In this document: positions 36,326 to 64,000 of the stretch, in pieces
Numbering within the stretch: position 1 is the first letter of the stretch
Layout: each line of letters opens with the position of its first letter
Virus record (IMG/VR): IMGVR_UViG_3300035182_002586
Coordinates: 310,001-374,000 of that record
Direction: 5' to 3' (one strand)
DNA: 64,000 bases
Notes under the pieces: model-generated
The model's input: the letters and a program-made list of their open reading frames with translations, nothing else
What the model was told of the DNA's origin: nothing
Database searches by the model: none
Position numbers and translations under genes: made by a program

Positions 36326-37993
36326 TCACGATGACCCCAACGCGAAGAGCCGACCCTTGGCGAGTAGGGCAGCCTTCTCTGAGTCTGTGAGGTTCCGGCC
36401 CATGGCCTGGCGGCAGGCCGTCAAATAGCTGTCAGCGTTACGGAAAGACCCGATTCCGCCGACAGCCATCACAGTTCGATAGATTCGCCCTTCCCCCGCC
36501 TGGGAAGCGCGCCTCGTGGCAAGGTCGAGGACCCGAGAGACAGCAAGGACTTCACGACCCGTGAGGGCACCTGAGGTCTGCACTGCCTTCCAACCCCCAG
36601 CCTTGTGGAGAACCAGGCCGAGGAACACCTTCCGCGCTGTCTCTCCGCCGCCCGTCATGGCGACCACCGTGCGGGCGATCTCTTTCCATGCAGCGTGCTT
36701 CAGCGCGGACTTGATCAAGCTGTCGTTCGTGGGGTTGGGCTCCAGAAGATCACGGACCTTCTCGCCTTCACCCTTGTTGATCTCGCCGCGCAGCTTCTCC
36801 ATGGCGCGTTCACGGAGAGCGCCTGCGAGGTCGTCGACGATCTTTGCGAGAGGATCCTTGTCCTCTGCGGCGGGGGCGGCATCGGCCTCAGGACGGGCAG
36901 GGAAGCCTTCACCCTGCTGCTGTTCGCCTTGTGCGATCCTGGGGGTCGCAACGATCTGGTCCTGGTTCCACTCCGCAGCGCGAGCTACGACCATCTCCTC
37001 GATGCGAGGATCACCCGCAGGGAGTTCCGTGGCGGCAAACTCGCGCGGGATGAGAAGAGCACCCTGGTGGTTCTCTTTGGTGATGAGCTTGGCCGTCTCT
37101 GCGTCCGGCGGGAAGAGATGTGCGGCGGCCTTCTGGATGGCGCCCGTGTCTGCCGTGCGCGGACCCTGTGCAATGGCCGACGCGAGGTAGACGCTCATGC
37201 GGGCTGCGTCTTCCTCCGAGAGGATGTTGCGGAGCACGGCGCCCGTGAAGGCGGGGTTCGCAACCCACGACGCCTCGATGAACTTGACCGAGCCGGGCTC
37301 CTCTGACAGGTGCCCGCACAGCTCCGCGATCTTGCGCTTCTGGCCAAGCTCGTCGATGAACTCGGAGCCCTTGAAGTACTTGATGTGCGGACAGAGCTGC
37401 GTCTCGTCGTAGGCGACGTTGCCGCACCGCGAACAGATCGTGAACTGCACCTGGCAGCCCATCGAGAGGGTCTGGAGCTGACCGCTCGTGATCGCCGAGA
37501 TGAGCGGGCGGTGTTCCTTCTTCGTCGCAACGAGGATGTCGACGTAGATGGAGTCGCCGATGTCGCGCGCTGCTGCGTCGATGATCTTCCCCTTCGACAG
37601 CTCGGGGATCTGGATGTGCTCGACGTAGTTCTCACCGCCCACGAACGTCTTGAAGCAGGCGAGGAGCAACTTGCGCTCCCACGCGTCCTGGTTGTTGTTG
37701 ACGTACTTCGTGGAGGGCAGTGTGATGTAGTAGTCGCCGTACTTGCGGTCGATCTGGAAGCCGTCGACCATCTGCTTACCGAGCTTCGAGGCCGGCGTCT
37801 CCGTGTCGACGGAGGCGATGATCGTGCAGTGCGTGAGCAAGTAGTCCTTGGGGTCGTACTTCTCGATTGTGACCTTGGAGGCTTCCTTCGAGAGAAGCGA
37901 CACCCCGCCCGTAGACGCAATACGATCCTGCCACCCCTGGTGGTGGATCGTCGGCTTCACGATCGCCGCTTTCGCGTACTTGAGGAATGCCAT
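36326..37993 (-). CDS. putative prohead maturation protease with Zn-cluster insert and C-terminal extension
   Basis: NYVEHIQ, TLSMGC (candidate catalytic Ser), CSRCGN...CPH, FIEASWVANPAF; upstream of scaffold and MCP. Confidence 0.7.
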   Translation of the reverse strand: MAFLKYAKAAIVKPTIHHQGWQDRIASTGGVSLLSKEASKVTIEKYDPKDYLLTHCTIIASVDTETPASKLGKQMVDGFQIDRKYGDYYITLPSTKYVNNNQDAWERKLLLACFKTFVGGENYVEHIQIPELSKGKIIDAAARDIGDSIYVDILVATKKEHRPLISAITSGQLQTLSMGCQVQFTICSRCGNVAYDETQLCPHIKYFKGSEFIDELGQKRKIAELCGHLSEEPGSVKFIEASWVANPAFTGAVLRNILSEEDAARMSVYLASAIAQGPRTADTGAIQKAAAHLFPPDAETAKLITKENHQGALLIPREFAATELPAGDPRIEEMVVARAAEWNQDQIVATPRIAQGEQQQGEGFPARPEADAAPAAEDKDPLAKIVDDLAGALRERAMEKLRGEINKGEGEKVRDLLEPNPTNDSLIKSALKHAAWKEIARTVVAMTGGGETARKVFLGLVLHKAGGWKAVQTSGALTGREVLAVSRVLDLATRRASQAGEGRIYRTVMAVGGIGSFRNADSYLTACRQAMGRNLTDSEKAALLAKGRLFALGSS

Positions 37994-37997
37994 AGGA

Positions 37998-38210
37998 CTA
38001 CGCGACCCTCCGCACCTCGGTCGAGGAGACCGTCGTGGGGTCGTCATCACCGTCGTAGAGAACGCTGAGGGTCAACCCGTGCGCTTCCACGACTGCGCCC
38101 TTCTTGCCCGCTGCGCCCATGACGCGCTCACCGGCTTGGATCGACATGGCTTCCGCCACGTTCGATCGCACCTGCGCAGGACTTCCGAACTTCGCGAAAG
38201 CCATCACCAC
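37998..38210 (-). CDS. small SH3-like hypothetical protein
   Basis: GERV...KGAVVE...VLYDG; head-gene cluster. Confidence 0.55.
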   Translation of the reverse strand: MVMAFAKFGSPAQVRSNVAEAMSIQAGERVMGAAGKKGAVVEAHGLTLSVLYDGDDDPTTVSSTEVRRVA

Positions 38211-44769: not shown

Positions 44770-45807
44770 CTACTTCCCCGGGTCAAACATCCCTTCGTCG
44801 ATCAAACGGTCCCGAAGATAGTCTGGGTCAGCGTAGGGCTCGTTTTCTCGCACCAGGAAGTACCGAAGGGTAGGATCCTCGTGGATCAGGTTCTCTTTGA
44901 TCCGGTCCCGCTCCTGTAGTGCAAAGTACCGCTCCTCGCACTTGATGTAAACGCTAGGGAAAACGTAGTGCTGGTAGCCGTGGAACTCCACGATGAGGTG
45001 GTGGGAGGGGAAGAAGCCATCGAAGCGGAAGAAGCCATCGAAGCGGAAGCGATGGCCGGTCGAGGGGTTGACGAAACGGCGAGGACTCCACTCCTGCTCG
45101 TACACGACACCCCCGAGAGCCCTCGACACTGCATCGAGGCAGAGAGTTTGACGGAGGCGGTGGCTGAATGTCTCCAGACCGTGGCGTTCGCACTCACGCT
45201 TGATGACCTTGAAGTCGCGCCCGAGTGCCGCCATCGCTTGAGCGATGACCACCCGGTTCCATCCTGCGCTGGCAGACATCTTTGCCCGGGTCTCGGCGGA
45301 GAGGGTGCGGCCCTTGCGGGTTGCCTTATCCCTGATCGCAGACCTGCGGGAGATGACGTCCCCTTCGTACTGGCCTTCGTGCTCTGGGTGCTTGGATCGG
45401 ATGTGACTCACCAGGCTCTCTGCGCGGTGACCGCAGAGGTGGCATGTCACATAGTCTTCCCTTTCGATCTTGCCCTGCCACACGACCTCATCATCTTGGG
45501 TCTTACACGACGGACACCGAAGATCCTTCGATGCGAAGGTCAACCCCACTTGATGGGAGGCACCACACGGGCAAGTGACGATCTTTTTCTGTCCCGTTCG
45601 GGGATTCTCAGCGTGAGCCCGTGTGATAGCGACTCGTCGGTTTGCTTCACATGTCTCGGACCGGATGCGGGCGTCAGGATACTGTGCCCGATATGCGTCG
45701 GCCGTGACCCCATGCGTAGCCTTGAGGTGGCTAGCCAGAGTCACGGCCGAGTGCCCACAGATACGACAGGTGACGGTTTCTCCCGCGGTTCCGAGCCTAC
45801 GCTCAGA
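44770..45807 (-). mobile_element. free-standing Vsr/DUF559-like PD-(D/E)XK endonuclease with zinc fingers; start uncertain
   Basis: CRICGH...SHLKATH, CHLCGH...SHIRSKH, FDGFF...IVEFHGYQHY...RDRIKE; lower GC3 than flanks. Confidence 0.75.
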
Positions 45808-52460: not shown

Positions 52461-53474
52461 CTACTCCGAGTGGGCATCACGCGCGAGAACCAGCAGGCCC
52501 TCGGCTACGGCGGTCATCGGGTCCTTCGCCTGACGGACCTCGCTGATCGGGATCGGGAAGCCGCGCTTCTTCACGGCCTCGAACTCTTCCTTGAAGATGT
52601 CCATGAACCCGTCGGCCTTCGACGTACCGCCGGAGACGACGAACGGGATGGCATCGGGGAGGTCGATCTTCGTTTGGCTCTTGCGGAACTGCGCTGCGAT
52701 GTTGTCGAGGCAGTACGTGATGAGGGCGCGGATGTAGAGCGCGATCGCCTCCTGCTCACGGCCAACCGGCTTCGTGAGATTGACGCCCTTCTCCTTGATC
52801 GCGCACATGCGGGCCGGCGTTGAACCCATCGCCTTGGCTGCGTGGGCGTCGACCCAATCACCGCCACGTGCGAGGGCGAACGAGAGACCCTCGACCGTCT
52901 GGTACGAGAGGGCCACGTTGCACATACCCGACCCGAAGCTCACCGCGAGACCTGAGAAGCCGTCGTCCGCGCAGTTCGAGTAGACGATGGCCATCGCCTC
53001 GTTCGTCGGGACGGCCTTGTACCCGTGCTCGGTGATGATCTTCCGGAAGATCTCAGTGTGGTACACGATGTCCTGGCCTTCGTCGTCGACCGGGGCAGCG
53101 GGCACGCTGTAGTAGCAGTTCTCGCCGGAGACGACCGGATCCTCCAGGACCTTGTAGACGAGAAGGCTCAGGATCTCCTGCGCGTCCACCTCGGCGGAGG
53201 ACACGACACCCCGTGCCAGCGGACGGCGCACGTCACGCTTGAACAGGTTTGCCATCGTAAGGGCACTGTCCCCGATGACGATGATCTGCCCATCCTTCTC
53301 GATGTACGAGACCTTGGACATCCTGAGAGAGCGTTTCGCCTCCGGGTCTAGATCCAGGAAGGCGTCGCGGACCCTCTGTGTCACGGTTTTGTCGTTGTCG
53401 TTCGTGCGAGCAGAAACCAAATTCATGGTTCCCACGTCGAGTCCGACCCCAGGTCTCATTTTCGCGTCGCCCAT
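52461..53474 (-). CDS. actin-like (ASKHA) ATPase
   Basis: GLDVGT (phosphate 1), NEAMA (connect 1), SFGSGMCNV (phosphate 2), VSGGTS (adenosine), DPMTAVAEG (connect 2). Confidence 0.88.
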   Translation of the reverse strand: MGDAKMRPGVGLDVGTMNLVSARTNDNDKTVTQRVRDAFLDLDPEAKRSLRMSKVSYIEKDGQIIVIGDSALTMANLFKRDVRRPLARGVVSSAEVDAQEILSLLVYKVLEDPVVSGENCYYSVPAAPVDDEGQDIVYHTEIFRKIITEHGYKAVPTNEAMAIVYSNCADDGFSGLAVSFGSGMCNVALSYQTVEGLSFALARGGDWVDAHAAKAMGSTPARMCAIKEKGVNLTKPVGREQEAIALYIRALITYCLDNIAAQFRKSQTKIDLPDAIPFVVSGGTSKADGFMDIFKEEFEAVKKRGFPIPISEVRQAKDPMTAVAEGLLVLARDAHSE

Positions 53475-54262
53475 TTGATCTTCTCCCTGATTCGATTTTC
53501 ACATGCTGCGGGGTCTGTCTGGATGTCACGTTCCCACAGACGAAGCACAGACAGCCCTCGCATCAAAGCCTGCTTGTCGGCCAAAGTGTCCAGCCCCTTG
53601 CGTTGTCTCTGCCTCGGGCTGAGTTGCTTGTAAACGGCTGGATTACCGTGCCAGTAATCTCCGGTTTGGATCACAACTCCCAGGGAGGGGATAAGAAAGT
53701 CCACGGTGAAGTCCCCCACCTGTCCCTGTGCGACGAAATCCACCGTGAGGCGTTCTAGTACCCCTCTGACCCAAGCCTCAATTTTCGTCTCCCGTCGTTG
53801 AAACTTGCGAAGCCTCTCTGGTGAGGCAGCTCGGAGCTTGGCCTTGTACTCCTCTGCCTGAGTTGGACCGTACGTTTCTTCGTAGGAGCGCCCCGCTTTA
53901 GACTGGACGTGTGCTCTGATCCCACGTGTGATCTCAGCGACGTACTTGGGATCTTGGTAGAGGTGTTTGACCCTGTGGACAGGGTTCGCTTCACCTCGCT
54001 GCTGCTCTCCGAACTCGGGGTGCACACGATGCCATCGACAAAGAGGGTTTCGGTCCCCCTCCAACCATGGCTTGTCCCTCTCAGAAAGCGTCTTGGTACG
54101 TAGCCCATGCCGACGTAGTTCACGCTGGATCGTTGCGGACCCGCAGTGGAAAAACGTCTTCAAATCTGACAGCCGTGCGTCTGGATTCGCAGCCAGTACG
54201 GCTTCCAGTTCGGCTTTGGGTATCTCTCGCCCAGGCATTGTTCCTACATCTGAGCCTGGCAT
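53456..54262 (-). mobile_element. free-standing Vsr/DUF559-like endonuclease, possibly degenerate
   Basis: ETKIE...FTVDFLIP...VIQTGDYWHGNP...LRLWERDI; lower GC3; overlaps the actin-like gene start. Confidence 0.75.
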
Positions 54263-54273
54263 AAGAGCAATCT

Positions 54274-55002
54274 CTAGCGGCAGTCGTACTTGTAGCCCGA
54301 CTGAGAAGCCGTCTTCGCCGTCCTCTGGTTCAGGAGGTAGACGAACTCCTCGTGCTTGTCGGCGATGCCCTGGAGCATGTTGTCCGTGCCCGACGAGAGC
54401 ATGTTGAGGGCCGTCAGGTCCGCCCTCACAGCCTCGACGAGCGCGATGGCCATCTTCACGACCGCCAGACTGCACGCAGGGAAGTTCGCAGGCCCTTCGA
54501 GACCTTCCGGCTGCGCGTAGGCCACGAGAACCGCCTGGTGGGCCATCTGGATGACCGGACCCACGTACTCGACGCCCCCCGTGCTGACCGTGCGCTCGGC
54601 CCACGAGTCGATCAGCCCGTTCGTGTCGTTGTAGAGGCGATCGAAGAGAAGGTGGTCCCCGTAGTAGTCCGGGCCCCTCGTCTGCCAGTGGTGCGTCTGG
54701 TGGATGACGGTCTCCGCCCGGAGCATCGACAGCAGCACGCCCATGAGCCCGAAGGGACCCGCGTACTGCGCCTTCAAGAGCCCGAAGACCTTCTCCGGAG
54801 ACGCTCCCGCAAGCCACTGTGACGGCGGCAGCATGAGCGGCGTGTCTGCGCCGACCGCCGCCGTCTTCGGACGTGCGGATGCAATCGGAGCCCCATCGAC
54901 GGTCTGACCGGGGAGGTAGGGCGGACCGTGCGCGAAGTGGTTGTACTGCGTAGGGTCGTGCCAGATCGCGTAGGCTGCCGCGCCGTTGGGATCGTGAGCC
55001 AT
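54274..55002 (-). CDS. Dps/ferritin-like protein with N-terminal extension
   Basis: HQTHHWQTRGPDYYGDHLLFDRLYND...IDSWAER...DKHEEFVYLL. Confidence 0.8.
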   Translation of the reverse strand: MAHDPNGAAAYAIWHDPTQYNHFAHGPPYLPGQTVDGAPIASARPKTAAVGADTPLMLPPSQWLAGASPEKVFGLLKAQYAGPFGLMGVLLSMLRAETVIHQTHHWQTRGPDYYGDHLLFDRLYNDTNGLIDSWAERTVSTGGVEYVGPVIQMAHQAVLVAYAQPEGLEGPANFPACSLAVVKMAIALVEAVRADLTALNMLSSGTDNMLQGIADKHEEFVYLLNQRTAKTASQSGYKYDCR

Positions 55003-59435: not shown

Positions 59436-59900
59436 ATGAGCCAAGGTGTGTTGGTCGTGTCTCTGGCCGATGGGAAGGTGGTGGTTTCTGCTGGGGATGA
59501 AAAGCGTACCTTTGCCCACGAGGACACGGAGAAGATCGGAGATTTCCTAGCGGAGCAAGAGCCGCACCGCATCATGTACTCTTCGTCGGTGAGCCACCCC
59601 GACGAGTACGGGTTCCCCGAGGACTTCAACCTGGACCCGTTTCTCGCGAAGGCCGAAGCACACGCCAGGATGAAGACGGCGGTGAGGTTCCCACCCCACC
59701 CTCTACAGGAGGCCACCGAAGCTCTCGAAGCGGCCACCGCCTCGGCACCCAAGGACAGACCTGTCGCGGTGCTGTTCCTCCAGGCGGGCAAAGAGGGTCA
59801 GGACGCCCTCGTCGAGTTCGCAGGCGAGTCCGAGCTGGAGATGTTCCTTGGGGGTATGCGGTACGCGAGGAACCTCGCCAAGCTCACGTCGAAGGACTAG
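59436..59900 (+). CDS. hypothetical protein
   Basis: GGTGTA 10 nt upstream, high GC3. Confidence 0.7.
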   Translation: MSQGVLVVSLADGKVVVSAGDEKRTFAHEDTEKIGDFLAEQEPHRIMYSSSVSHPDEYGFPEDFNLDPFLAKAEAHARMKTAVRFPPHPLQEATEALEAATASAPKDRPVAVLFLQAGKEGQDALVEFAGESELEMFLGGMRYARNLAKLTSKD

Positions 59901-61369
59901 GGCTTGTGTAGTTTCGACAGGAACTCTGCGACGCGCCCCTGTACTTCTTGGGGGTCTGCCTTGAGGTCGGACTCCCACACGACCAAGCAAGACACCCCGA
60001 TGTCTGCGTAGGCTCCGATCAGCTCTTGTTCGTGATCGAAGTTCGCTTTGCCCGTGAACATTCGGGAGTGCCAAAAGTCCCCAAACAACTCGACCGCTTT
60101 CGTAATACCCATTTTCGGGCGTGCGAGGTCCGGGCCGGGAAGAAGAAAATCGGGGTTCTTGTGTTGCCCCAGCTTAGGCAACCACCGCCAGAATGTACCG
60201 TTCCCCGTGTAGAGAAGCTGTGGGACGAGTGCATGAAGCATCCGTTCGGACAGGTTCGGCCCCGATCGTACATTCGCACAGAGGGCTTTGAAAGCCACAC
60301 CGGGGTCCATCATGGCATTGGGGACACCGTAGGTGTCCATACACGTAGCTTTGTACGACTCGACTGCCTTCACGTAGACTTCTGGGCTCTTCATGGGGTT
60401 ATCGAACCCATACCGTTCCAAGCATACGGTGCGTCGTTTCTCCAGCACCTCTGCAAGTTGCAGAGGGTGTGTCACGCCGTACTTGCGCAAGAAAGTCTCA
60501 ACGGCCCTATCCCAAAACCCGTCGATCTTTGCAGGATGATCGACCCCATACCTTTCTATGAGTGCCTCTCGGATCTTCGCTCGACCTTCATCCGAGGCTA
60601 GAAAGTGGCTGCCGTACCGTCCTTCCATGGTGTCGTACTGTTGCTGACGCACACCAGGATGTTGTGCGGTCCAGTCTACACCCCAGCGCTTCTGGTTCGT
60701 CTGGCGTGTACGCCCCACAACCTCTGCCGAGGCACCAGGAGATGGCCCCCCGTACCGTTTAGTGTTGGTCGCAATGATACGCGCCCGCACCTCAGGAGAA
60801 GCTAACACCTCCCCCACGCCATACCTATCCAAGTTCGTAGCGCGTGTCTGTGCCCGAACGACAGGTGACTGCTGAGGGTTCTCCGCTCCACGACGTGCGA
60901 GATGTGTAGCTCGGATCTTAGCTTTTACGTCAGCACGAGAGAAAGGATTGTCCTCCCCCGTAAGCGACCGGTGGTTCGCTTTCGACGCTGCTTGTACTTG
61001 AGCGAAAAGTGCGGACTCACGTGCGAAGTTGTTTTCCGCTCCGTACCTCTCTCTTAGCGTGGCTTTACGTCTTTCTTCAGCAGACGTAATGCTTCGGGGG
61101 TTTACCACACCTTCGCCATGATTTCGTTGGAGGGTCTCCGCAAGACGCTCCATCTGCACCTCCCCCCGATCGCGCTCCGCCCAACGTGTACACGATGTTC
61201 GATGGCGCTTCATCTGCGTAGCAGACATCGCCTCAAACCCACACAGACAGGGCCTTGGTCTGCGATCACCCAGTGCCTCTCGCCAGCCCTCACACACAGA
61301 CTTGTGGCGAGAGTTGATCACGTCAGAGGTAGCGAAGTGCTTTTGGCAGTGGGGGCAAGTGACGGGCAC
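59897..61369 (-). mobile_element. free-standing endonuclease with zinc fingers, repeated T-x3-RYG units and C-terminal Vsr/DUF559-like domain
   Basis: Repeats ATLRERYGAEN, ATNLDRYGVGE, TFLRKYGVTHP, VCLERYGFDNP; KNPDF...AVELFGDFWH...VVWESD; low GC3. Confidence 0.8.
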
Positions 61370-61396
61370 ACAGGTGTTGTACCGTAGGGCCCTACG

Positions 61397-62341
61397 TTAG
61401 GCAAGGTGTGGGGACAGCATATCGAGAATAACCTTACAAAACAGGAACAAGGGGATGACGAATCCTACGAACTTTCTAGGTGTGAGTACACCTGCACCTA
61501 CATAGGGTCCAAAACTCGACCTGATTCCCGTTCCGAACTTCGGCTGCTGAAGACCACGGACGAAGTTGACGGTGGCTTTCGCGCGATCAAGCTGCTTGTC
61601 GAATTGGTCAGCCGCCGCGTTCATCGCCGCTTCGTACTTGCTTGCCTTGTCGATGCCGAGCGAAACGCCGCCGATGGAGTAGTCGAACTCGTCCGCCACC
61701 CAGTTGATGCGGAGCGCCTGTAGGGCGTGAATCTGCGCGGCCGTGAGCAGGAGCGTGGTCCACTCGCGTCGCTCACGCACCATCACATCGACGCTCGGGA
61801 AGGGCGTGCGCGGCGGTGCCGAGACGATCATATCCAGACCGCGCTGGATGTACTCGTTCAGCTCTTCCTCTTCCCAGATGAAGCCGAAGACCCGGTTGAA
61901 CTGCCGGATGGTCGTCTCGTGGGTCGGGGGGCGGAAGTGGTAATTGCGGTCAGGGGAGTTCGAGACGAGCATCCCGGATCGGTGGAGAACGAAGTTGTGC
62001 CAGTCCTCCGCTGTCAGATCATACATGTACTGTCTGGAGGGCAGACGTTCCACAGAGAGAACCTGTACAGAGGCACTGTGACTCGCAACCTTGGTGTCTG
62101 TGCTCAGTCTCTCCGTCTCTACCTTGGTGCGCGGGGTCAGAAACACCCGGTGACCACCAGTCAGGACAGACGAACCCTTGGAGGTCGTCACCTTGAGGAT
62201 CGATTCCGGACCCACCTCAGCTCGATGAACGTGTAGGACGCGCTTCCACTCCGACTGACCCTCGGGGGAGACAGACTGCACACGCAACGACCCTTGTTCA
62301 AAGGCCGCTCGGATCTTCTCGCGTTGCAAGGGGCTCAGCAT
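61397..62341 (-). CDS. IntC (128 aa) fused to the C-extein of a putative neck/head-tail adaptor protein
   Basis: GGAGAAGGA-N6-ATG; VLTGGHRVF (block B), MYDLTAEDWHNFVL (block F), LVSN|S (block G); extein DEFDYSIGGVSL. Confidence 0.85.
   Translation of the reverse strand: MLSPLQREKIRAAFEQGSLRVQSVSPEGQSEWKRVLHVHRAEVGPESILKVTTSKGSSVLTGGHRVFLTPRTKVETERLSTDTKVASHSASVQVLSVERLPSRQYMYDLTAEDWHNFVLHRSGMLVSNSPDRNYHFRPPTHETTIRQFNRVFGFIWEEEELNEYIQRGLDMIVSAPPRTPFPSVDVMVRERREWTTLLLTAAQIHALQALRINWVADEFDYSIGGVSLGIDKASKYEAAMNAAADQFDKQLDRAKATVNFVRGLQQPKFGTGIRSSFGPYVGAGVLTPRKFVGFVIPLFLFCKVILDMLSPHLA
61958..62341 (-). mobile_element. split intein, C-terminal fragment
   Basis: Blocks B, F, G; terminal Asn at 61958-61960 followed by Ser+1. 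Confidence 0.85.
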
Positions 62342-63263
62342 CGAAGTCCTTCTCCGTCCAGATGAGGAAGTCCCACCCCATGCGCGCTGCATAGGAAGAA
62401 GCTGCTTCGAGCCTGCGCGTCACACGGTGGTCCGGGGGGAGGCTCAGGGTCCAGCTCGCCTTCACTTCGACCAGAACGATGGACCCGTCATGGTGGGTCA
62501 CAAAGAAGTCGGGAAGGATCCAACGACCATCTGGCAGCTCTACCCGTGGCTCAAACAAGTACTCTTTCACAGACGGGTCACGATCCAGAAGGCGCACCAC
62601 AACCCGCTCATAGCTGCTGCGCGTCCAAATGAGTGCCCGTGTGCACTTCTTGGGGGACACCCACTCGCCGCGACCCCGCTGCCACTTTTCGGGGTTGTCC
62701 AACATACGTTGTGTCTGCGCCGCAGACCGGAGCGCCCGCACATCCTCTCGGTGATGATACGCCAGAAGACGGCCACGCTCCTCAGGACGTTGCCACCTGC
62801 GAAGCGCGGATTCACGGCGGCGATGCTTTACATCGGGCCTCTGTGCGACAAGGCGTAGCGTTTCCCGCTCCTCAACAGACCGAATACGACCACGGTGAAA
62901 GTCGAACGAGCCGGCCTCCCACGCTTTCTGCATCCGCAATGAGAGCCACGGCTTCTCTCGGCCCTTACCTGCACGGCCAACGACAGCAGCGTTTGCGGCC
63001 CGGTTAGCTCTGGAGGCGTCGTTCCACGCTGCCTTGGTCAGTCGTTGTATGGCAGCGAGTGACAAGCCGGTCAGAGACATCATCCGCTTCCAGGGGGTCC
63101 CTGCGGCATGTAACTCTGTGACCAAAGCACTGCGTTTCTGGGCAACCCCCAAAGGAGGGCGACCGGGCTTTCGAAACACCTCCCAAGAAATACCGTGCTT
63201 CGCAAGCAACGGTACCAGTTCAGGGGGCGGGAGTAGTTCCGTGGATCGCCTCGTAGAGATCAC
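62298..63263 (-). mobile_element. TnsA-N-like PD-(D/E)XK endonuclease between the two intein halves
   Basis: RSSYE...DRDPSVKEYLFEP...PDFFV...LVEVK...GWDFLIWTEKD; basic N-terminal region; start uncertain. Confidence 0.82.
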
Positions 63264-63726
63264 GGATAGTAACTACCATTTTCTCGCCCCCCACGTCAAG
63301 TTCGACCTCTTCCTCCCCACCTACACAGTTGTCGCGGAGCAGGATGCGCAGGCGGCGCATCAGGTCGCTCTCGATCTGCGTGAACGTCGAGGTGCCCATG
63401 AGCGAGGCGGTCACCTTGTCGACGACCTCGAACTCCTGGAGCACCTGCTGGATCGCTGCCCCGACCGACTGCCTGAACGTCCATCGGATGCGGTAGCTGC
63501 CGATGTTGGCGTCGAGAGGGATGATGATCGACGAGTAGTACTCGCCGACCGACGGGTTCACCGGCGTCCGCTTCGCGGGACCGAGGAGGACCTCCATCCC
63601 CGTCGTGTAGTCGTAGAGGGCGTAGGAGATCTCCGCGGCGTTCACCGGCACGTCAGACGACGAGACGAGGAAGATGTTGAGGTCCTCCCGCCCGAGCTGC
63701 TGACCCTTGTAGAACGCCGTGGACAT
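63220..63726 (-). CDS. N-extein of a putative neck protein fused to IntN (35 aa)
   Basis: ...RRLRILLRDN|CVGGEEEVELDVGGEKMVVTIRDLYEAIHGTTPAP*. Confidence 0.85.
   Translation of the reverse strand: MSTAFYKGQQLGREDLNIFLVSSSDVPVNAAEISYALYDYTTGMEVLLGPAKRTPVNPSVGEYYSSIIIPLDANIGSYRIRWTFRQSVGAAIQQVLQEFEVVDKVTASLMGTSTFTQIESDLMRRLRILLRDNCVGGEEEVELDVGGEKMVVTIRDLYEAIHGTTPAP
63223..63327 (-). mobile_element. split intein, short N-terminal fragment (block A only)
   Basis: Cys1 at 63325-63327; C-x5-V...G...I.dLye is block A-like; codon usage shifts at Cys1. Confidence 0.8.
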
Positions 63727-63730
63727 CGAT

Positions 63731-64000
63731 TCACTCTTCCGACATGCTCTTGAGCCCGTCGATCACCGACTTGATCTTTTTGTGATCGACCTTCTGCGGG
63801 TTTGCTCCGGGAAGCTTCATGCCCTCCGGCAGGTCGAGATGCTGCTCCAGACTCTTGATCGTCGAGTCGATCTTCTTCTTGGAGACTGCTTCGCCCTTTT
63901 CGAGCGCACGGGCGATCTCGTTCATCGAGCCGCCGCCCTGCGAGAATTCGTACAGCTTGTTCGAGAGGTCGCGCACTGCACCAGCATCACCCTTGTGCTT
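63731..64000 (-). CDS. partial hypothetical protein, 5' end outside the window
   Basis: Frame open from the window end to the stop at 63731. Confidence 0.65.
   Translation of the reverse strand, partial: KHKGDAGAVRDLSNKLYEFSQGGGSMNEIARALEKGEAVSKKKIDSTIKSLEQHLDLPEGMKLPGANPQKVDHKKIKSVIDGLKSMSEE

What the first reader, a model, noticed from the sequence alone, without database searches (positions are those of the whole stretch)
62298..63263. TnsA-like endonuclease wedged between the intein halves in a third frame, overlapping both
Seen: the three ORFs use three different minus-strand frames. The nuclease ORF overlaps the IntN end (44 nt if the GTG at 63263 is the start) and the IntC start (44 nt), so the IntC SD and ATG lie inside the nuclease coding sequence. 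It sits between blocks A and B, not at the canonical B-F endonuclease position. Established: described fractured-gene loci pair conventionally split inteins with Vsr-like endonucleases; here the nuclease is TnsA-N-type. Inference: the nuclease invaded a mini-intein after block A, created the atypical split, and is retained because its 3' end supplies the IntC translation signals. It may home the whole cassette into intein-less alleles.
Basis: partly seen in the sequence, partly recalled or inferred. Interest (0 to 1): 0.8.

Follow-up and report, generated by a model that had tools for sequence, protein, structure and literature searches.

The report
Nuclease-split intein in phage virion gene
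A virion-protein gene of a huge (over 500 kb) phage is cut in two by a self-splicing intein that is itself broken, at an unusual early point, by a free-standing TnsA-type nuclease gene; this is a new variant of the known "fractured gene" layout, and relatives show several stages of the nuclease's decay.

Summary
On the minus strand lie N-extein+IntN (63220-63726), a 321-aa nuclease ORF (62298-63263) and IntC+C-extein (61397-62341). They use three frames, with 44-nt overlaps at both ends.

The nuclease's C-terminal domain is TnsA-type (Pfam above its cut-off; best PDB fold match is TnsA). Its catalytic residues are invariant in 61 homologues.

The same host gene occurs in relatives without an intein (RDN|NPD), with a contiguous mini-intein, and split. 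In a nuclease-independent scan of IMG/VR, 27 distinct intein-bearing loci comprised:
- 16 with an intact TnsA-like nuclease
- 7 with decayed copies
- 1 with an HNH nuclease at the same break
- 3 with a contiguous intein

One pair is 100% identical in DNA except for a clean 771-bp deletion inside the nuclease. Every decayed copy whose 3' end was read keeps it; that end carries the IntC ribosome-binding site and start codon.

In the window, IntN, nuclease and IntC form one low-GC3 island whose edges lie at the splice junctions. This suggests the cassette arrived as a unit.

The layout, the overlap and the "nuclease supplies the start codon" model were published by Dassa et al. 2009, including one early-broken intein. 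New here are the nuclease family, the structural host gene and the decay series. No activity was tested.

The parts
63328..63726 (-). N-extein (133 aa) of a conserved virion-module protein; ends ...LRILLRDN
   Evidence: It aligns with residues 1-136 of intein-less homologues such as P0178. GC3 is 0.95.
63220..63327 (-). IntN: 35 residues starting at Cys1 (CVGGEEE...), carrying block A and the N2-like helix (..IRDLYEAIHG), then stop TGA 63220-63222
   Evidence: It aligns with the first ~35 residues of contiguous mini-inteins P0117, P0099, P0126 and P0157. GC3 falls to 0.57 exactly at the RDN|C junction.
62298..63263 (-). Free-standing nuclease ORF, 321 aa from GTG 63263
   Evidence: At least 60 homologues at 35-68% identity. 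AlphaFold pLDDT 91.5. All-helical N-terminal two thirds followed by an alpha/beta catalytic domain.
62700..63263 (-). N-terminal helical region of the nuclease (residues 1-188), with a helix-turn-helix-like unit at about residues 40-76 and further helices; presumed DNA-binding part
   Evidence: Helices from the model. Conserved W58, M61, T65-G66-L67, R74 and T76. No Pfam family matches. DNA binding is inferred, not shown.
62346..62678 (-). TnsA-type PD-(D/E)xK catalytic domain (residues 196-306). Invariant residues: S216, E219 (62607-62609), E238, D252 (62508-62510), E266 (62466-62468), K268 (62460-62462), T303, E304
   Evidence: Pfam PF08722 above its cut-off. NCBIfam TnsA_like_Actin E 4.5e-10. 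Foldseek best match TnsA 1t0f/1f1z. A profile alignment places PDF and EVK on the TDF and QVK of TnsA. Invariance in 61 sequences; coordinates.
63220..63263 (-). 44-nt overlap of the nuclease 5' end with the non-conserved tail of IntN
   Evidence: In relatives the same junction ranges from a short gap (L007, L010) to a 44-nt overlap.
62298..62341 (-). 44-nt overlap of the nuclease 3' end with the IntC start
   Evidence: In relatives the overlap is 4 to 107 nt, and the IntC start is always inside the nuclease ORF.
62347..62355 (-). Shine-Dalgarno-like GGAGAAGGA for IntC, made by nuclease codons T303-E304-K305-D306
   Evidence: The equivalent purine run lies upstream of the IntC start in every locus read, and TnsA itself has FTDKE at the aligned place.
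61958..62341 (-). IntC: 128 residues from ATG 62341, with block B (TGGH, 62150-62161), block F (YMYDLTAEDWHNF) and block G ending ...LVSN
   Evidence: Pfam Intein_splicing E 6e-7. The contiguous homologue matches the Pho RadA mini-intein, E 2.5e-4, and the NCBIfam intein C-terminal domain. GC3 is 0.70.
61397..61957 (-). C-extein (186 aa plus stop), starting at Ser+1 (SPDRNYHFRPP...)
   Evidence: It aligns with residues 137-302 of intein-less P0178. GC3 returns to 0.86 directly after the junction and falls to 0.57 in the last 69 codons.

Best explanation
This is a fractured gene in the sense of Dassa et al. 2009, carried by a huge phage. A conserved virion-module gene is interrupted after ...RDN by a class 1 mini-intein. 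The intein is in turn interrupted, in the loop between its N2 helix and block B, by a free-standing nuclease gene.

Proposed working:
1. The three ORFs are transcribed together with the structural genes.
2. Translation of N-extein+IntN ends at 63220. The nuclease is translated at a low, coupled level from GTG 63263.
3. IntC+C-extein starts at ATG 62341, using a ribosome-binding site formed by the nuclease's own T-E-K-D codons.
4. The 35-residue IntN and the 128-residue IntC associate and trans-splice. This gives a mature protein of about 319 aa with the junction RDN-SPD.
5. The nuclease has a helical DNA-binding region and a TnsA-type PD-(D/E)xK domain. It acts as a selfish, homing-type enzyme: in mixed infections it cuts alleles that lack the cassette, and repair copies IntN, nuclease and IntC in as one unit.
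6. Once targets are gone the nuclease decays by deletion. Its 3' end is kept because IntC cannot be translated without it. This leaves a nuclease-free split intein.

Shown by sequence: the layout, its conservation, intact catalytic and splicing residues, the translation signals, the compositional island, the patchy distribution and the deletion series.

Inferred: splicing, cleavage, the cleavage target and the low-level translation.
For: Layout: the same five-part arrangement is in all 10 loci found through the nuclease, in L089 and in 23 further loci found through IntC alone.

Splicing residues present: Cys1, TGGH, terminal Asn, Ser+1. The intein is a genuine HINT domain.

Nuclease: TnsA fold, with eight catalytic-domain residues invariant in 61 sequences.

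Association: no nuclease homologue lies within 5 kb of intein-less or contiguous alleles, and there is no paralogue elsewhere in the window.

Translation signals: the IntC start lies 4-107 nt inside the nuclease ORF in every locus, shortly after the purine run from the W-T-E-K codons. In L087/L088 the N-terminal half is not adjacent, but the nuclease stays joined to IntC.

Mobility as a unit: GC3 is 0.95 in the N-extein, 0.57 / 0.65 / 0.70 in IntN / nuclease / IntC, and 0.86 in the next 117 extein codons. In resident genes only 5.9% of 35-codon windows are at or below 0.70. Across loci the cassette's GC3 spans a narrower range (0.39-0.75) than the exteins' (0.44-0.95) and is above the host's in L007.

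Patchy distribution: 13 changes of intein presence on a 171-row C-extein tree. One clade of intein-bearing alleles is rejected (lnL difference 533, p-AU 2e-6). The window's C-extein is closest to eight intein-less alleles.

Decay series: 7 of 27 distinct loci carry frameshifted, truncated or 29-50-codon remnants. L182 and L181 are 100% identical in DNA apart from a clean in-frame 771-bp deletion in the nuclease.
Against: No activity was measured, neither splicing nor cleavage.

The penultimate intein residue is Ser, not the usual His. Relatives vary at this position.

The nuclease start has no clear ribosome-binding site.

Pairwise identities of nuclease and C-extein co-vary (Spearman 0.59, p 0.001), and no near-identical cassette was seen in a distant host. 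Most of the history is therefore vertical, and recent homing is not directly documented.

Low GC3 could partly reflect weaker codon selection on the intein and nuclease. It is also seen, more weakly, in a contiguous intein (L083: 0.66 against 0.75).

Three unrelated nucleases use the same loop (TnsA-like; HNH in L177; DUF559/Vsr-like at the second site in L086). That fits nucleases targeting the intein gene itself at least as well as whole-cassette homing.
Confidence: 0.75

Rival explanations
1. The nuclease targets only the nuclease-less contiguous intein. It cuts in the loop between N2 and block B and spreads from intein to intein, while the intein itself is not mobilised. The cassette does not home into intein-less alleles. 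This is partly compatible with the best explanation.
For: Contiguous alleles exist at the same site. Three unrelated nuclease families occupy the same loop of homologous inteins: TnsA-like; HNH in L177; DUF559/Vsr-like at the second site in L086. This is step II of the model of Dassa et al. 2009.
Against: In the window, IntN and IntC share the nuclease's low GC3, and the island ends at the splice junctions rather than at the nuclease edges. Contiguous alleles are rare: 6 against 112 split rows in the tree set, and 3 of 27 distinct loci in IMG/VR. Few targets would therefore be available.
Confidence: 0.3
2. The nuclease is not selfish. It is a phage function, for example a T4 gp4-like head-completion nuclease or a DNA-binding regulator, that happens to be encoded inside the intein.
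For: The best PHROG match for the catalytic domain is phrog_218 'head closure' (E 2e-9). The host gene lies in the virion module. The catalytic residues are conserved.
Against: It is absent next to intein-less and contiguous alleles. It is deleted, truncated or frameshifted in 7 of 27 distinct loci, including a clean deletion in an otherwise identical phage. An HNH nuclease replaces it in L177. The 71 viral loci that match only the catalytic core do so at about 30% identity.
Confidence: 0.07
3. The intein halves no longer splice. The two host-protein fragments work as separate, non-covalently associated subunits, and the intein pieces serve only as a dimerisation interface.
For: The penultimate His is missing (Ser-Asn at the C-terminal junction). 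No splicing data exist. Intein-independent reassembly of a fractured gene is known for Aeh1 NrdA (PMC3045599, listed; abstract only).
Against: Cys1, T-x-x-H, the terminal Asn and Ser/Cys+1 are kept across highly diverged loci (T61, H64 and N128 invariant in 34 sequences). Intein-less alleles have Asn or Asp at +1, whereas intein-bearing alleles have Ser or Cys there, as expected if the nucleophile is needed.
Confidence: 0.1
4. The arrangement is a sequencing or assembly artefact, and the true sequence has the nuclease fused in frame inside a contiguous intein.
For: None found.
Against: The identical sequence is in an independent IMG/VR contig. More than 25 loci from different samples have separate ORFs with their own stops and starts. 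The relative frames differ between loci; in L007 IntN and the nuclease share a frame but are separated by a stop.
Confidence: 0.01

Closest known systems
Fractured genes (Dassa, London, Stoddard, Schueler-Furman, Pietrokovski 2009, PMC2677866)
   Same: [quoted passage not shown] The nuclease 3' end overlaps the IntC start (6-69 bp there, 4-107 nt here). Origin is in phages. Their model has the invader supplying the stop and the Met codon, followed by loss of the nuclease.
   Different: Their nucleases are GIY-YIG or Vsr-like; here the nuclease is TnsA-type PD-(D/E)xK. Their hosts are DNA synthesis, repair and packaging enzymes; here the host is a virion-module protein. They report 27-51 non-coding bases and a hairpin before the nuclease. 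Here the nuclease start overlaps IntN, and no hairpin or promoter signal was found.
[quoted passage not shown]
   Same: The break is near the N-terminus, upstream of block B. This gives a short IntN (35 aa here) and a long IntC (128 aa here, 122 in the terminase locus).
   Different: The host gene differs. IntN here includes the N2-like helix as well as block A. Sequence relatedness to the TerL or PolB16 inteins was not tested, because no reference sequences were at hand. Which nuclease sits in those loci could not be read from the papers held.
TnsA, the endonuclease subunit of Tn7 (PDB 1f1z, 1t0f)
   Same: Same catalytic fold. The acidic and lysine residues align, and the F/W-T-D/E-K motif follows the last strand.
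   Different: There is no TnsA C-terminal domain, and no transposase genes appear among the neighbouring genes examined. The NCBIfam score is far below the family cut-off (39 against 110 bits). A long helical N-terminal region is present instead.
I-Ssp6803I, the known PD-(D/E)xK homing endonuclease (cited in PMC2677866)
   Same: A restriction-enzyme-fold nuclease serving a self-splicing element.
   Different: It is encoded in a group I intron. No chain described as I-Ssp6803I was among the 50 listed Foldseek matches.
Pseudomonas jumbo phage MIJ3 PolB, fractured with an HNH nuclease (PMC6892783)
   Same: A jumbo phage with a split intein and a free-standing nuclease between the halves.
   Different: The break is at the conventional position, after block N4. 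The nuclease is HNH and the host gene is a DNA polymerase.

Membership tests
Fractured gene (Dassa 2009) | One host gene in two same-strand ORFs that together align with an unbroken homologue | tested here: met
   The N and C parts align with residues 1-136 and 137-302 of intein-less P0178.
Fractured gene (Dassa 2009) | The upstream ORF ends with IntN and the downstream ORF starts with IntC | tested here: met
   Alignment with contiguous mini-inteins; HINT matches.
Fractured gene (Dassa 2009) | A free-standing endonuclease ORF between the halves, with its 3' end overlapping the IntC start | tested here: met
Class 1 intein | Cys/Ser at position 1, T-x-x-H in block B, C-terminal Asn, Cys/Ser/Thr at +1 | tested here: met
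   C134 of ORF1, TGGH, N128 and S+1. T61, H64 and N128 are invariant in 34 IntC sequences. The penultimate His is replaced by Ser.
Class 1 intein | Protein (trans-)splicing activity | not testable with these tools
   Needs co-expression and mass spectrometry.
Atypically split intein (short IntN) | Break upstream of block B; IntN of about 40 residues or fewer | tested here: met
   IntN is 35 aa; block B lies in IntC.
Atypically split intein (TerL / PolB16 lineages) | Sequence homology to the published atypical inteins | not tested
   No reference sequences were available from a tool. The closest solved intein by sequence is the Pho RadA mini-intein.
TnsA-like endonuclease N-terminal domain (Pfam PF08722) | Profile match above the gathering score | tested here: met
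   34.7 bits against 26.5 for the whole protein; 36.6 bits for the domain alone.
TnsA-like endonuclease N-terminal domain (Pfam PF08722) | PD-(D/E)xK catalytic residues in place | tested here: met
   E219, D252, E266 and K268 are invariant. They align to the TDF and QVK stretches of TnsA.
Tn7-type heteromeric transposase (TnsA proper) | TnsA C-terminal domain, and score above the NCBIfam family cut-off | tested here: not met
   No C-terminal domain hit. NF033179 scores 39.4 bits against a cut-off of 110.
Tn7-type heteromeric transposase (TnsA proper) | Adjacent TnsB/TnsC-type partner genes | tested here: not met
   The flanking ORFs are the two halves of the virion gene. The other neighbouring genes examined are structural or nuclease genes, and none matched a transposase family.
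Homing endonuclease (functional class) | Encoded within a self-splicing element and sporadically present among alleles | tested here: met
Homing endonuclease (functional class) | Site-specific cleavage of the allele that lacks the element | not testable with these tools
   Needs a cleavage assay on intein-less and contiguous alleles.
T4 gp4-like head-completion nuclease (phrog_218) | Profile match over the catalytic domain | tested here: inconclusive
   E 2e-9 over residues 211-308 only. The N-terminal two thirds, the position inside an intein and the frequent decay do not fit an essential assembly gene.

The most novel reading that the evidence does not exclude
This may be the type example of a large, undescribed family of naturally early-split inteins in a conserved virion gene of huge phages. 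In that reading, the loop before block B is a recurrent landing site for at least three unrelated nucleases (TnsA-like, HNH, DUF559/Vsr-like). The TnsA-like enzyme would be a new lineage of homing endonuclease. The natural series runs from intact nuclease through frameshift and 29-50-codon remnants to halves that are no longer adjacent, and it includes two otherwise identical phages differing by one clean deletion. That series would capture the birth of nuclease-free split inteins in progress.
Probability: 0.5. Interest if true: 0.72.

Novelty: new variant of a known kind. Interest (0 to 1): 0.62.

Why it matters
How split inteins arise is an old question. The standard model (a nuclease gene invades an intein, then is lost) rests on a few metagenomic snapshots. 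This gene family offers all states side by side: intein-less, contiguous, split with an intact nuclease, split with remnants, and halves that are no longer adjacent. It occurs at two sites of one gene, in hundreds of phage contigs, and includes a present-day deletion polymorphism. The steps can therefore be tested directly.

It also adds a TnsA-type enzyme to the nucleases that ride in inteins, and shows inteins thriving in a virion gene rather than in a DNA enzyme.

On the practical side, short-IntN split inteins are sought for protein semi-synthesis. This family offers many natural variants, including Ser1/Ser+1 inteins at the second site.

Finally, gene callers mis-start IntC because of the overlap, as in the window's own record. 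Such loci are therefore hidden in automatic annotation.

Tried and rejected
- DNA search of 59800-64000 against deposited phage genomes found no match.
- The promoter and terminator scan, and folding of the region before the nuclease start, gave nothing above shuffled controls. The hairpin reported upstream of nucleases in Dassa 2009 is not evident here.
- The first state classification, based on whole-protein HMM domains and hmmalign, mislabelled many IntC-starting proteins as intein-less. It was replaced by separate HMMs for the three extein segments. Only the later counts are used.
- The IMG/VR scan with the intein-less alignment A4 used a pattern that spans the splice junction. It is biased to intein-less alleles and was used only to show how widespread the family is.
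- Contigs carrying P0157 had no DNA on file. The GOS-TerL paper (PMC4661395) is not held, so the nuclease type in the published early-split loci could not be checked.
- Extra nucleotide constraint on the ribosome-binding site within the W-T-E-K codons was considered and rejected. The purine run follows from the codons themselves, and the motif is ancestral to the TnsA fold.
- The host protein's role stays uncertain. There is no Pfam or PHROG family. The fold shows an N-terminal Ig-like sandwich and a helical C-terminal part. The best matches are uncharacterised phage proteins, including Bacillus phage G Gp165 and Gp160. There are only weak PDB matches to a portal-adaptor chain and to BppU-type baseplate proteins.
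- PDB sequence searches of two neighbouring genes gave nothing.
Full report
WHAT IS THERE

Three ORFs lie head to tail on the minus strand at the end of the window:
- ORF 63220-63726 (168 aa) ends ...LRILLRDN|CVGGEEE... and stops 35 residues after the Cys.
- ORF 62298-63263 (321 aa, from GTG) is the nuclease.
- The third ORF, read from ATG 62341 to 61397 (314 aa), begins MLSPLQREKIRAAF... and passes through ...MLVSN|SPDRNY... into the rest of the host protein.

The three starts fall in three different frames, and both overlaps are 44 nt. GGAGAAGGA lies 5 nt before ATG 62341 and is formed by the nuclease codons T303-E304-K305-D306. The longer ORF from ATG 62392 listed mechanically has no such signal, and in relatives that frame is closed a short way upstream.

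THE NUCLEASE

Pfam places residues 248-304 in Tn7_TnsA-like_N above the gathering score. NCBIfam gives a sub-threshold TnsA-like match.

A profile of 61 homologues finds only TnsA in the PDB. It aligns PDF and EVK with the TDF and QVK stretches of TnsA, and WTEKE with FTDKE.

An AlphaFold model with mean pLDDT 91.5 has TnsA as its only strong fold match (E 2e-5, about 140 aligned columns, rmsd 2.6-3.1).

S216, E219, E238, D252, E266, K268, T303 and E304 are invariant in 61 sequences that are 35-68% identical to the window protein.

The N-terminal 190 residues are all-helical, with a conserved helix-turn-helix-like unit, and belong to no Pfam family. This two-part build (DNA-binding region plus catalytic domain) is what Dassa et al. 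describe for GIY-YIG, HNH and Vsr-like homing enzymes. DNA binding here is an inference.

The protein is not a Tn7 transposase subunit. It has no TnsA C-terminal domain, no transposase genes appear among the neighbouring genes examined, and its score is far below the family cut-off.

THE INTEIN AND ITS BREAK POINT

Homologues of the host protein fall into three states at this site:
- Intein-less proteins of about 300 aa, reading LRDN|NPDRNY (or DPD).
- Proteins of about 450 aa with a contiguous mini-intein of about 150 aa.
- Split forms.

The contiguous inteins align with IntN plus IntC without a seam. The break falls in a short variable linker between the helix ...DLYEAIHG and K-I-R-x-A-F.

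A contiguous copy matches the Pho RadA mini-intein and the NCBIfam intein domains. Block B (T-G-G-H) and blocks F and G all lie in the part that is IntC here.

More precisely, it lies after the N2-like helix.

Cys1, T-x-x-H, the terminal Asn and Ser or Cys at +1 are kept across diverged loci. Intein-less alleles have Asn or Asp at +1.

CONTEXT

The window is part of IMG/VR contig IMGVR_UViG_3300035182_002586, 529 kb. The protein collection records a 620-kb contig for the same gene. Relatives sit on viral contigs of 100-520 kb. This is a huge-phage lineage with no deposited close relative.

The host protein has no named family. Its model shows an Ig-like sandwich and a helical C-terminal part, resembling uncharacterised proteins of other large phages, with faint similarity to adaptor and baseplate proteins. 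Neighbouring genes include a prohead-protease-like gene and a weak match to a virion structural protein. 'Virion-module protein of unknown role' is as far as the evidence goes.

IS THE ARRANGEMENT CONSERVED?

Every locus with a full-length relative of the nuclease has N-extein, IntN, nuclease, IntC and C-extein in that order. No nuclease homologue lies within 5 kb of an intein-less or a contiguous allele, and there is none elsewhere in the window.

In all loci read, the IntC start codon (ATG, or TTG in L001 and L088) lies 4-107 nt inside the nuclease ORF. It follows shortly after the purine run produced by the W-T-E-K-(D/E) codons.

At the other end, the junction varies from a short gap (L007, L010) to a 44-nt overlap. 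The nuclease start is ATG in L005, L009 and L011, and GTG at the window's position in L001, L002 and L004.

The relative frames differ between loci, and the nuclease is never fused in frame.

A CENSUS THAT DOES NOT DEPEND ON THE NUCLEASE

IMG/VR was scanned with an alignment of IntC sequences. The patterns lay in blocks B and F and at the C-terminal junction. The 31 informative loci collapse to 27 distinct ones:
- 16 have an intact TnsA-like nuclease.
- 7 have a decayed one:
  - L190, a frameshift.
  - L171, an internal deletion plus frameshift.
  - L172, only the last 92 codons left, lacking the helix that carries E219.
  - L180, L182, L187 and L197, remnant ORFs of 48, 50, 29 and 33 codons.
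- 1 (L177) has an HNH nuclease at the same break.
- 3 have a contiguous intein (L183, L189, L193).

L182 and L181 are 100% identical in DNA over 344 and 576 bp on either side of a clean in-frame 771-bp deletion. The deletion leaves the first 12 and last 38 codons of the nuclease. This is a present-day polymorphism between two samples.

Every remnant keeps the stretch just before the IntC start. It also shows that the body of the nuclease is dispensable to the phage.

In L087/L088 no N-extein or IntN lies within 3 kb upstream, where the genes are on the other strand. The nuclease nevertheless remains joined to IntC and the C-extein.

A SECOND SITE

The same host gene has a second intein site, at DEF|xYSIGG. 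Among 50%-identity representatives found with an intein-less query, the protein pieces were classified as follows:

| Site | None | Split | Contiguous |
|---|---|---|---|
| Site 1 | 63 | 26 | 6 |
| Site 2 | 66 | 36 | 10 |

In L086 the gene is in three pieces. Site 1 carries a TnsA-like nuclease. Site 2 carries a homologous intein broken at the same relative loop (its IntC starts MLNKNDKAKIRKAF...), but there the intervening gene is a DUF559/Vsr-like nuclease.

With the HNH case, three unrelated nucleases use this loop.

MOBILITY

Evidence for mobility:
- On a C-extein tree of 171 rows, intein presence at site 1 needs 13 changes (shuffled labels: mean 45.6). The 6 contiguous rows need 5 changes among the split ones.
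- A single clade of intein-bearing alleles is rejected (119 rows, lnL difference 533, p-AU 2e-6).
- The window's C-extein is slightly closer to eight intein-less alleles (75-78%) than to any split allele (75% or less).
- Composition gives the clearest signal in the window itself:
  - Third-position GC is 0.92-1.00 through the N-extein and drops to 0.56 exactly at RDN|C.
  - It stays at 0.50-0.76 through IntN, the nuclease and IntC.
  - It returns to 0.84-0.96 directly after SN|S.
  - In ten resident genes the mean of 35-codon windows is 0.86, and 5.9% are at or below 0.70.
  - IntN shares an ORF with the N-extein, and IntC with the C-extein, so expression level cannot explain the step. The simplest reading is that IntN, nuclease and IntC entered together, with recombination edges at the splice junctions.
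- In other loci the cassette's GC3 spans a narrower range (0.39-0.75) than the exteins' (0.44-0.95). It is lower than the host's in L001, L005, L008, L009, L010 and L089, similar in L002 and L004, and higher in L007.

Evidence against frequent recent transfer:
- Nuclease and C-extein identities co-vary (Spearman 0.59, p 0.001, 17 paired loci).
- No near-identical cassette was found in a distant host.

RELATION TO WHAT IS KNOWN

Dassa et al. 2009 (PMC2677866) defined fractured genes, and their paper already contains:
- nuclease/IntC overlaps of 6-69 bp;
- a terminase locus 'fractured at an unusual point', with a 122-residue C-terminal part that lacks only motif N1;
- a model in which the invading nuclease supplies the stop and Met codons and is later lost, leaving split inteins that may move apart.

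Short-IntN inteins (GOS-TerL 37 aa, AceL-TerL 25 aa, PolB16 OarG 15 aa) are established tools. A jumbo-phage PolB fractured with an HNH nuclease is also described.

Searches of the held library found no relevant paper linking TnsA-type nucleases with inteins or homing, and none describing this gene family.

The kind of system is therefore known. New are the nuclease family, the host gene class, the scale, the repeated use of one early loop by different nucleases, and the decay series.

VERDICT

- Splicing, cleavage and the cleavage target remain untested.

Noticed in passing
window 59897-61369 (-) and 61397-61606: Directly downstream of the host gene lies a second free-standing nuclease-type ORF of 490 aa (four DUF7487 repeats; phrog_3339 'homing endonuclease'). 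Its GC3 is 0.61. The last 69 codons of the host gene also have low GC3 (0.57 against 0.86 just upstream), which could be a co-converted flank. The same kind of ORF follows the host gene in L086 and L089, but not in L001, L002 or L083-L085.
   Followed up: partly
window 53456-54817 (-): A 453-aa ORF with a C-terminal DUF559/Vsr-like endonuclease match (phrog_13076; Pfam DUF559 E 0.006) and GC3 0.52. It overlaps the start of the Volactin-like gene by 19 nt and is probably another free-standing nuclease gene.
   Followed up: partly
window 52461-53474 (-); L085 7515 onward: A 337-aa ORF matches Pfam Volactin (PF25216) at E 2.4e-75 over the whole profile, inside the virion module of a huge phage. 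In relative L085 the homologous gene is 714 aa and carries an intein with a LAGLIDADG domain. No PDB sequence match was found.
   Followed up: partly
window 44770-45744 (-): A 324-aa ORF with a ROS/MucR-type zinc-finger match at its N-terminus and a phrog_22215 match. The same two families also match nuclease ORFs of L086. It may be a further nuclease-type mobile gene.
   Followed up: no
L086 472-2732; also L171, L175, L178, L190, L198: The host gene has a second intein site (DEF|xYSIGG), occupied in many relatives. L086 is in three pieces, with a DUF559/Vsr-like nuclease at site 2. The site-2 intein there has Ser1 and Ser+1 (EEF|SIHG......VAHN|SYS) and only two cysteines in IntC, so it is a candidate cysteine-independent early-split intein.
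   Followed up: partly
L177 2672-3511: At the same break of the site-1 intein, this locus carries an HNH nuclease (DHVVPLSHNG...CHSCN) instead of the TnsA-like one. Its 3' end again overlaps the IntC start.
   Followed up: partly
L182 1-920 against L181 2279-3969: Two viral contigs from different samples are 100% identical in DNA here, except for a clean in-frame 771-bp deletion that removes 257 codons of the nuclease.
   Followed up: yes
L087 / L088 1-4750: Nuclease, IntC and C-extein are present, but no N-extein or IntN lies within 3 kb upstream, where the genes are on the opposite strand. The two halves of the gene appear to be in different places of a contig of at least 331 kb. The N-terminal half was not located.
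   Followed up: partly
window 61397-62026 (record P0061): The public gene call for the window's own IntC+C-extein is 209 aa and starts at an internal Met (MYDLTAED...) inside block F. Several relatives are called the same way (P0121, P0135, P0139, P0147, P0160, P0164). The overlap with the nuclease hides the true start from gene callers.
   Followed up: yes
L003 3062-3364 (beyond window base 64000); L001 2285-2584; L004 3641-3943: An upstream gene encodes a paralogue of the host protein's N-terminal Ig-like domain (24-35% identity to the N-extein) in most loci.
   Followed up: no
window 61397-61459; P0162; L088: The window's C-extein carries a hydrophobic tail of about 20 residues after ...PRKFVGF. 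Most homologues lack it, but intein-less P0162 and L088 have it, so it was not created by the downstream nuclease gene.
   Followed up: partly
window 1-64000: No tRNA gene was found in the window. 36326-38050 encodes a head-maturation-protease-like protein (phrog_18299, E 4e-9).
   Followed up: no
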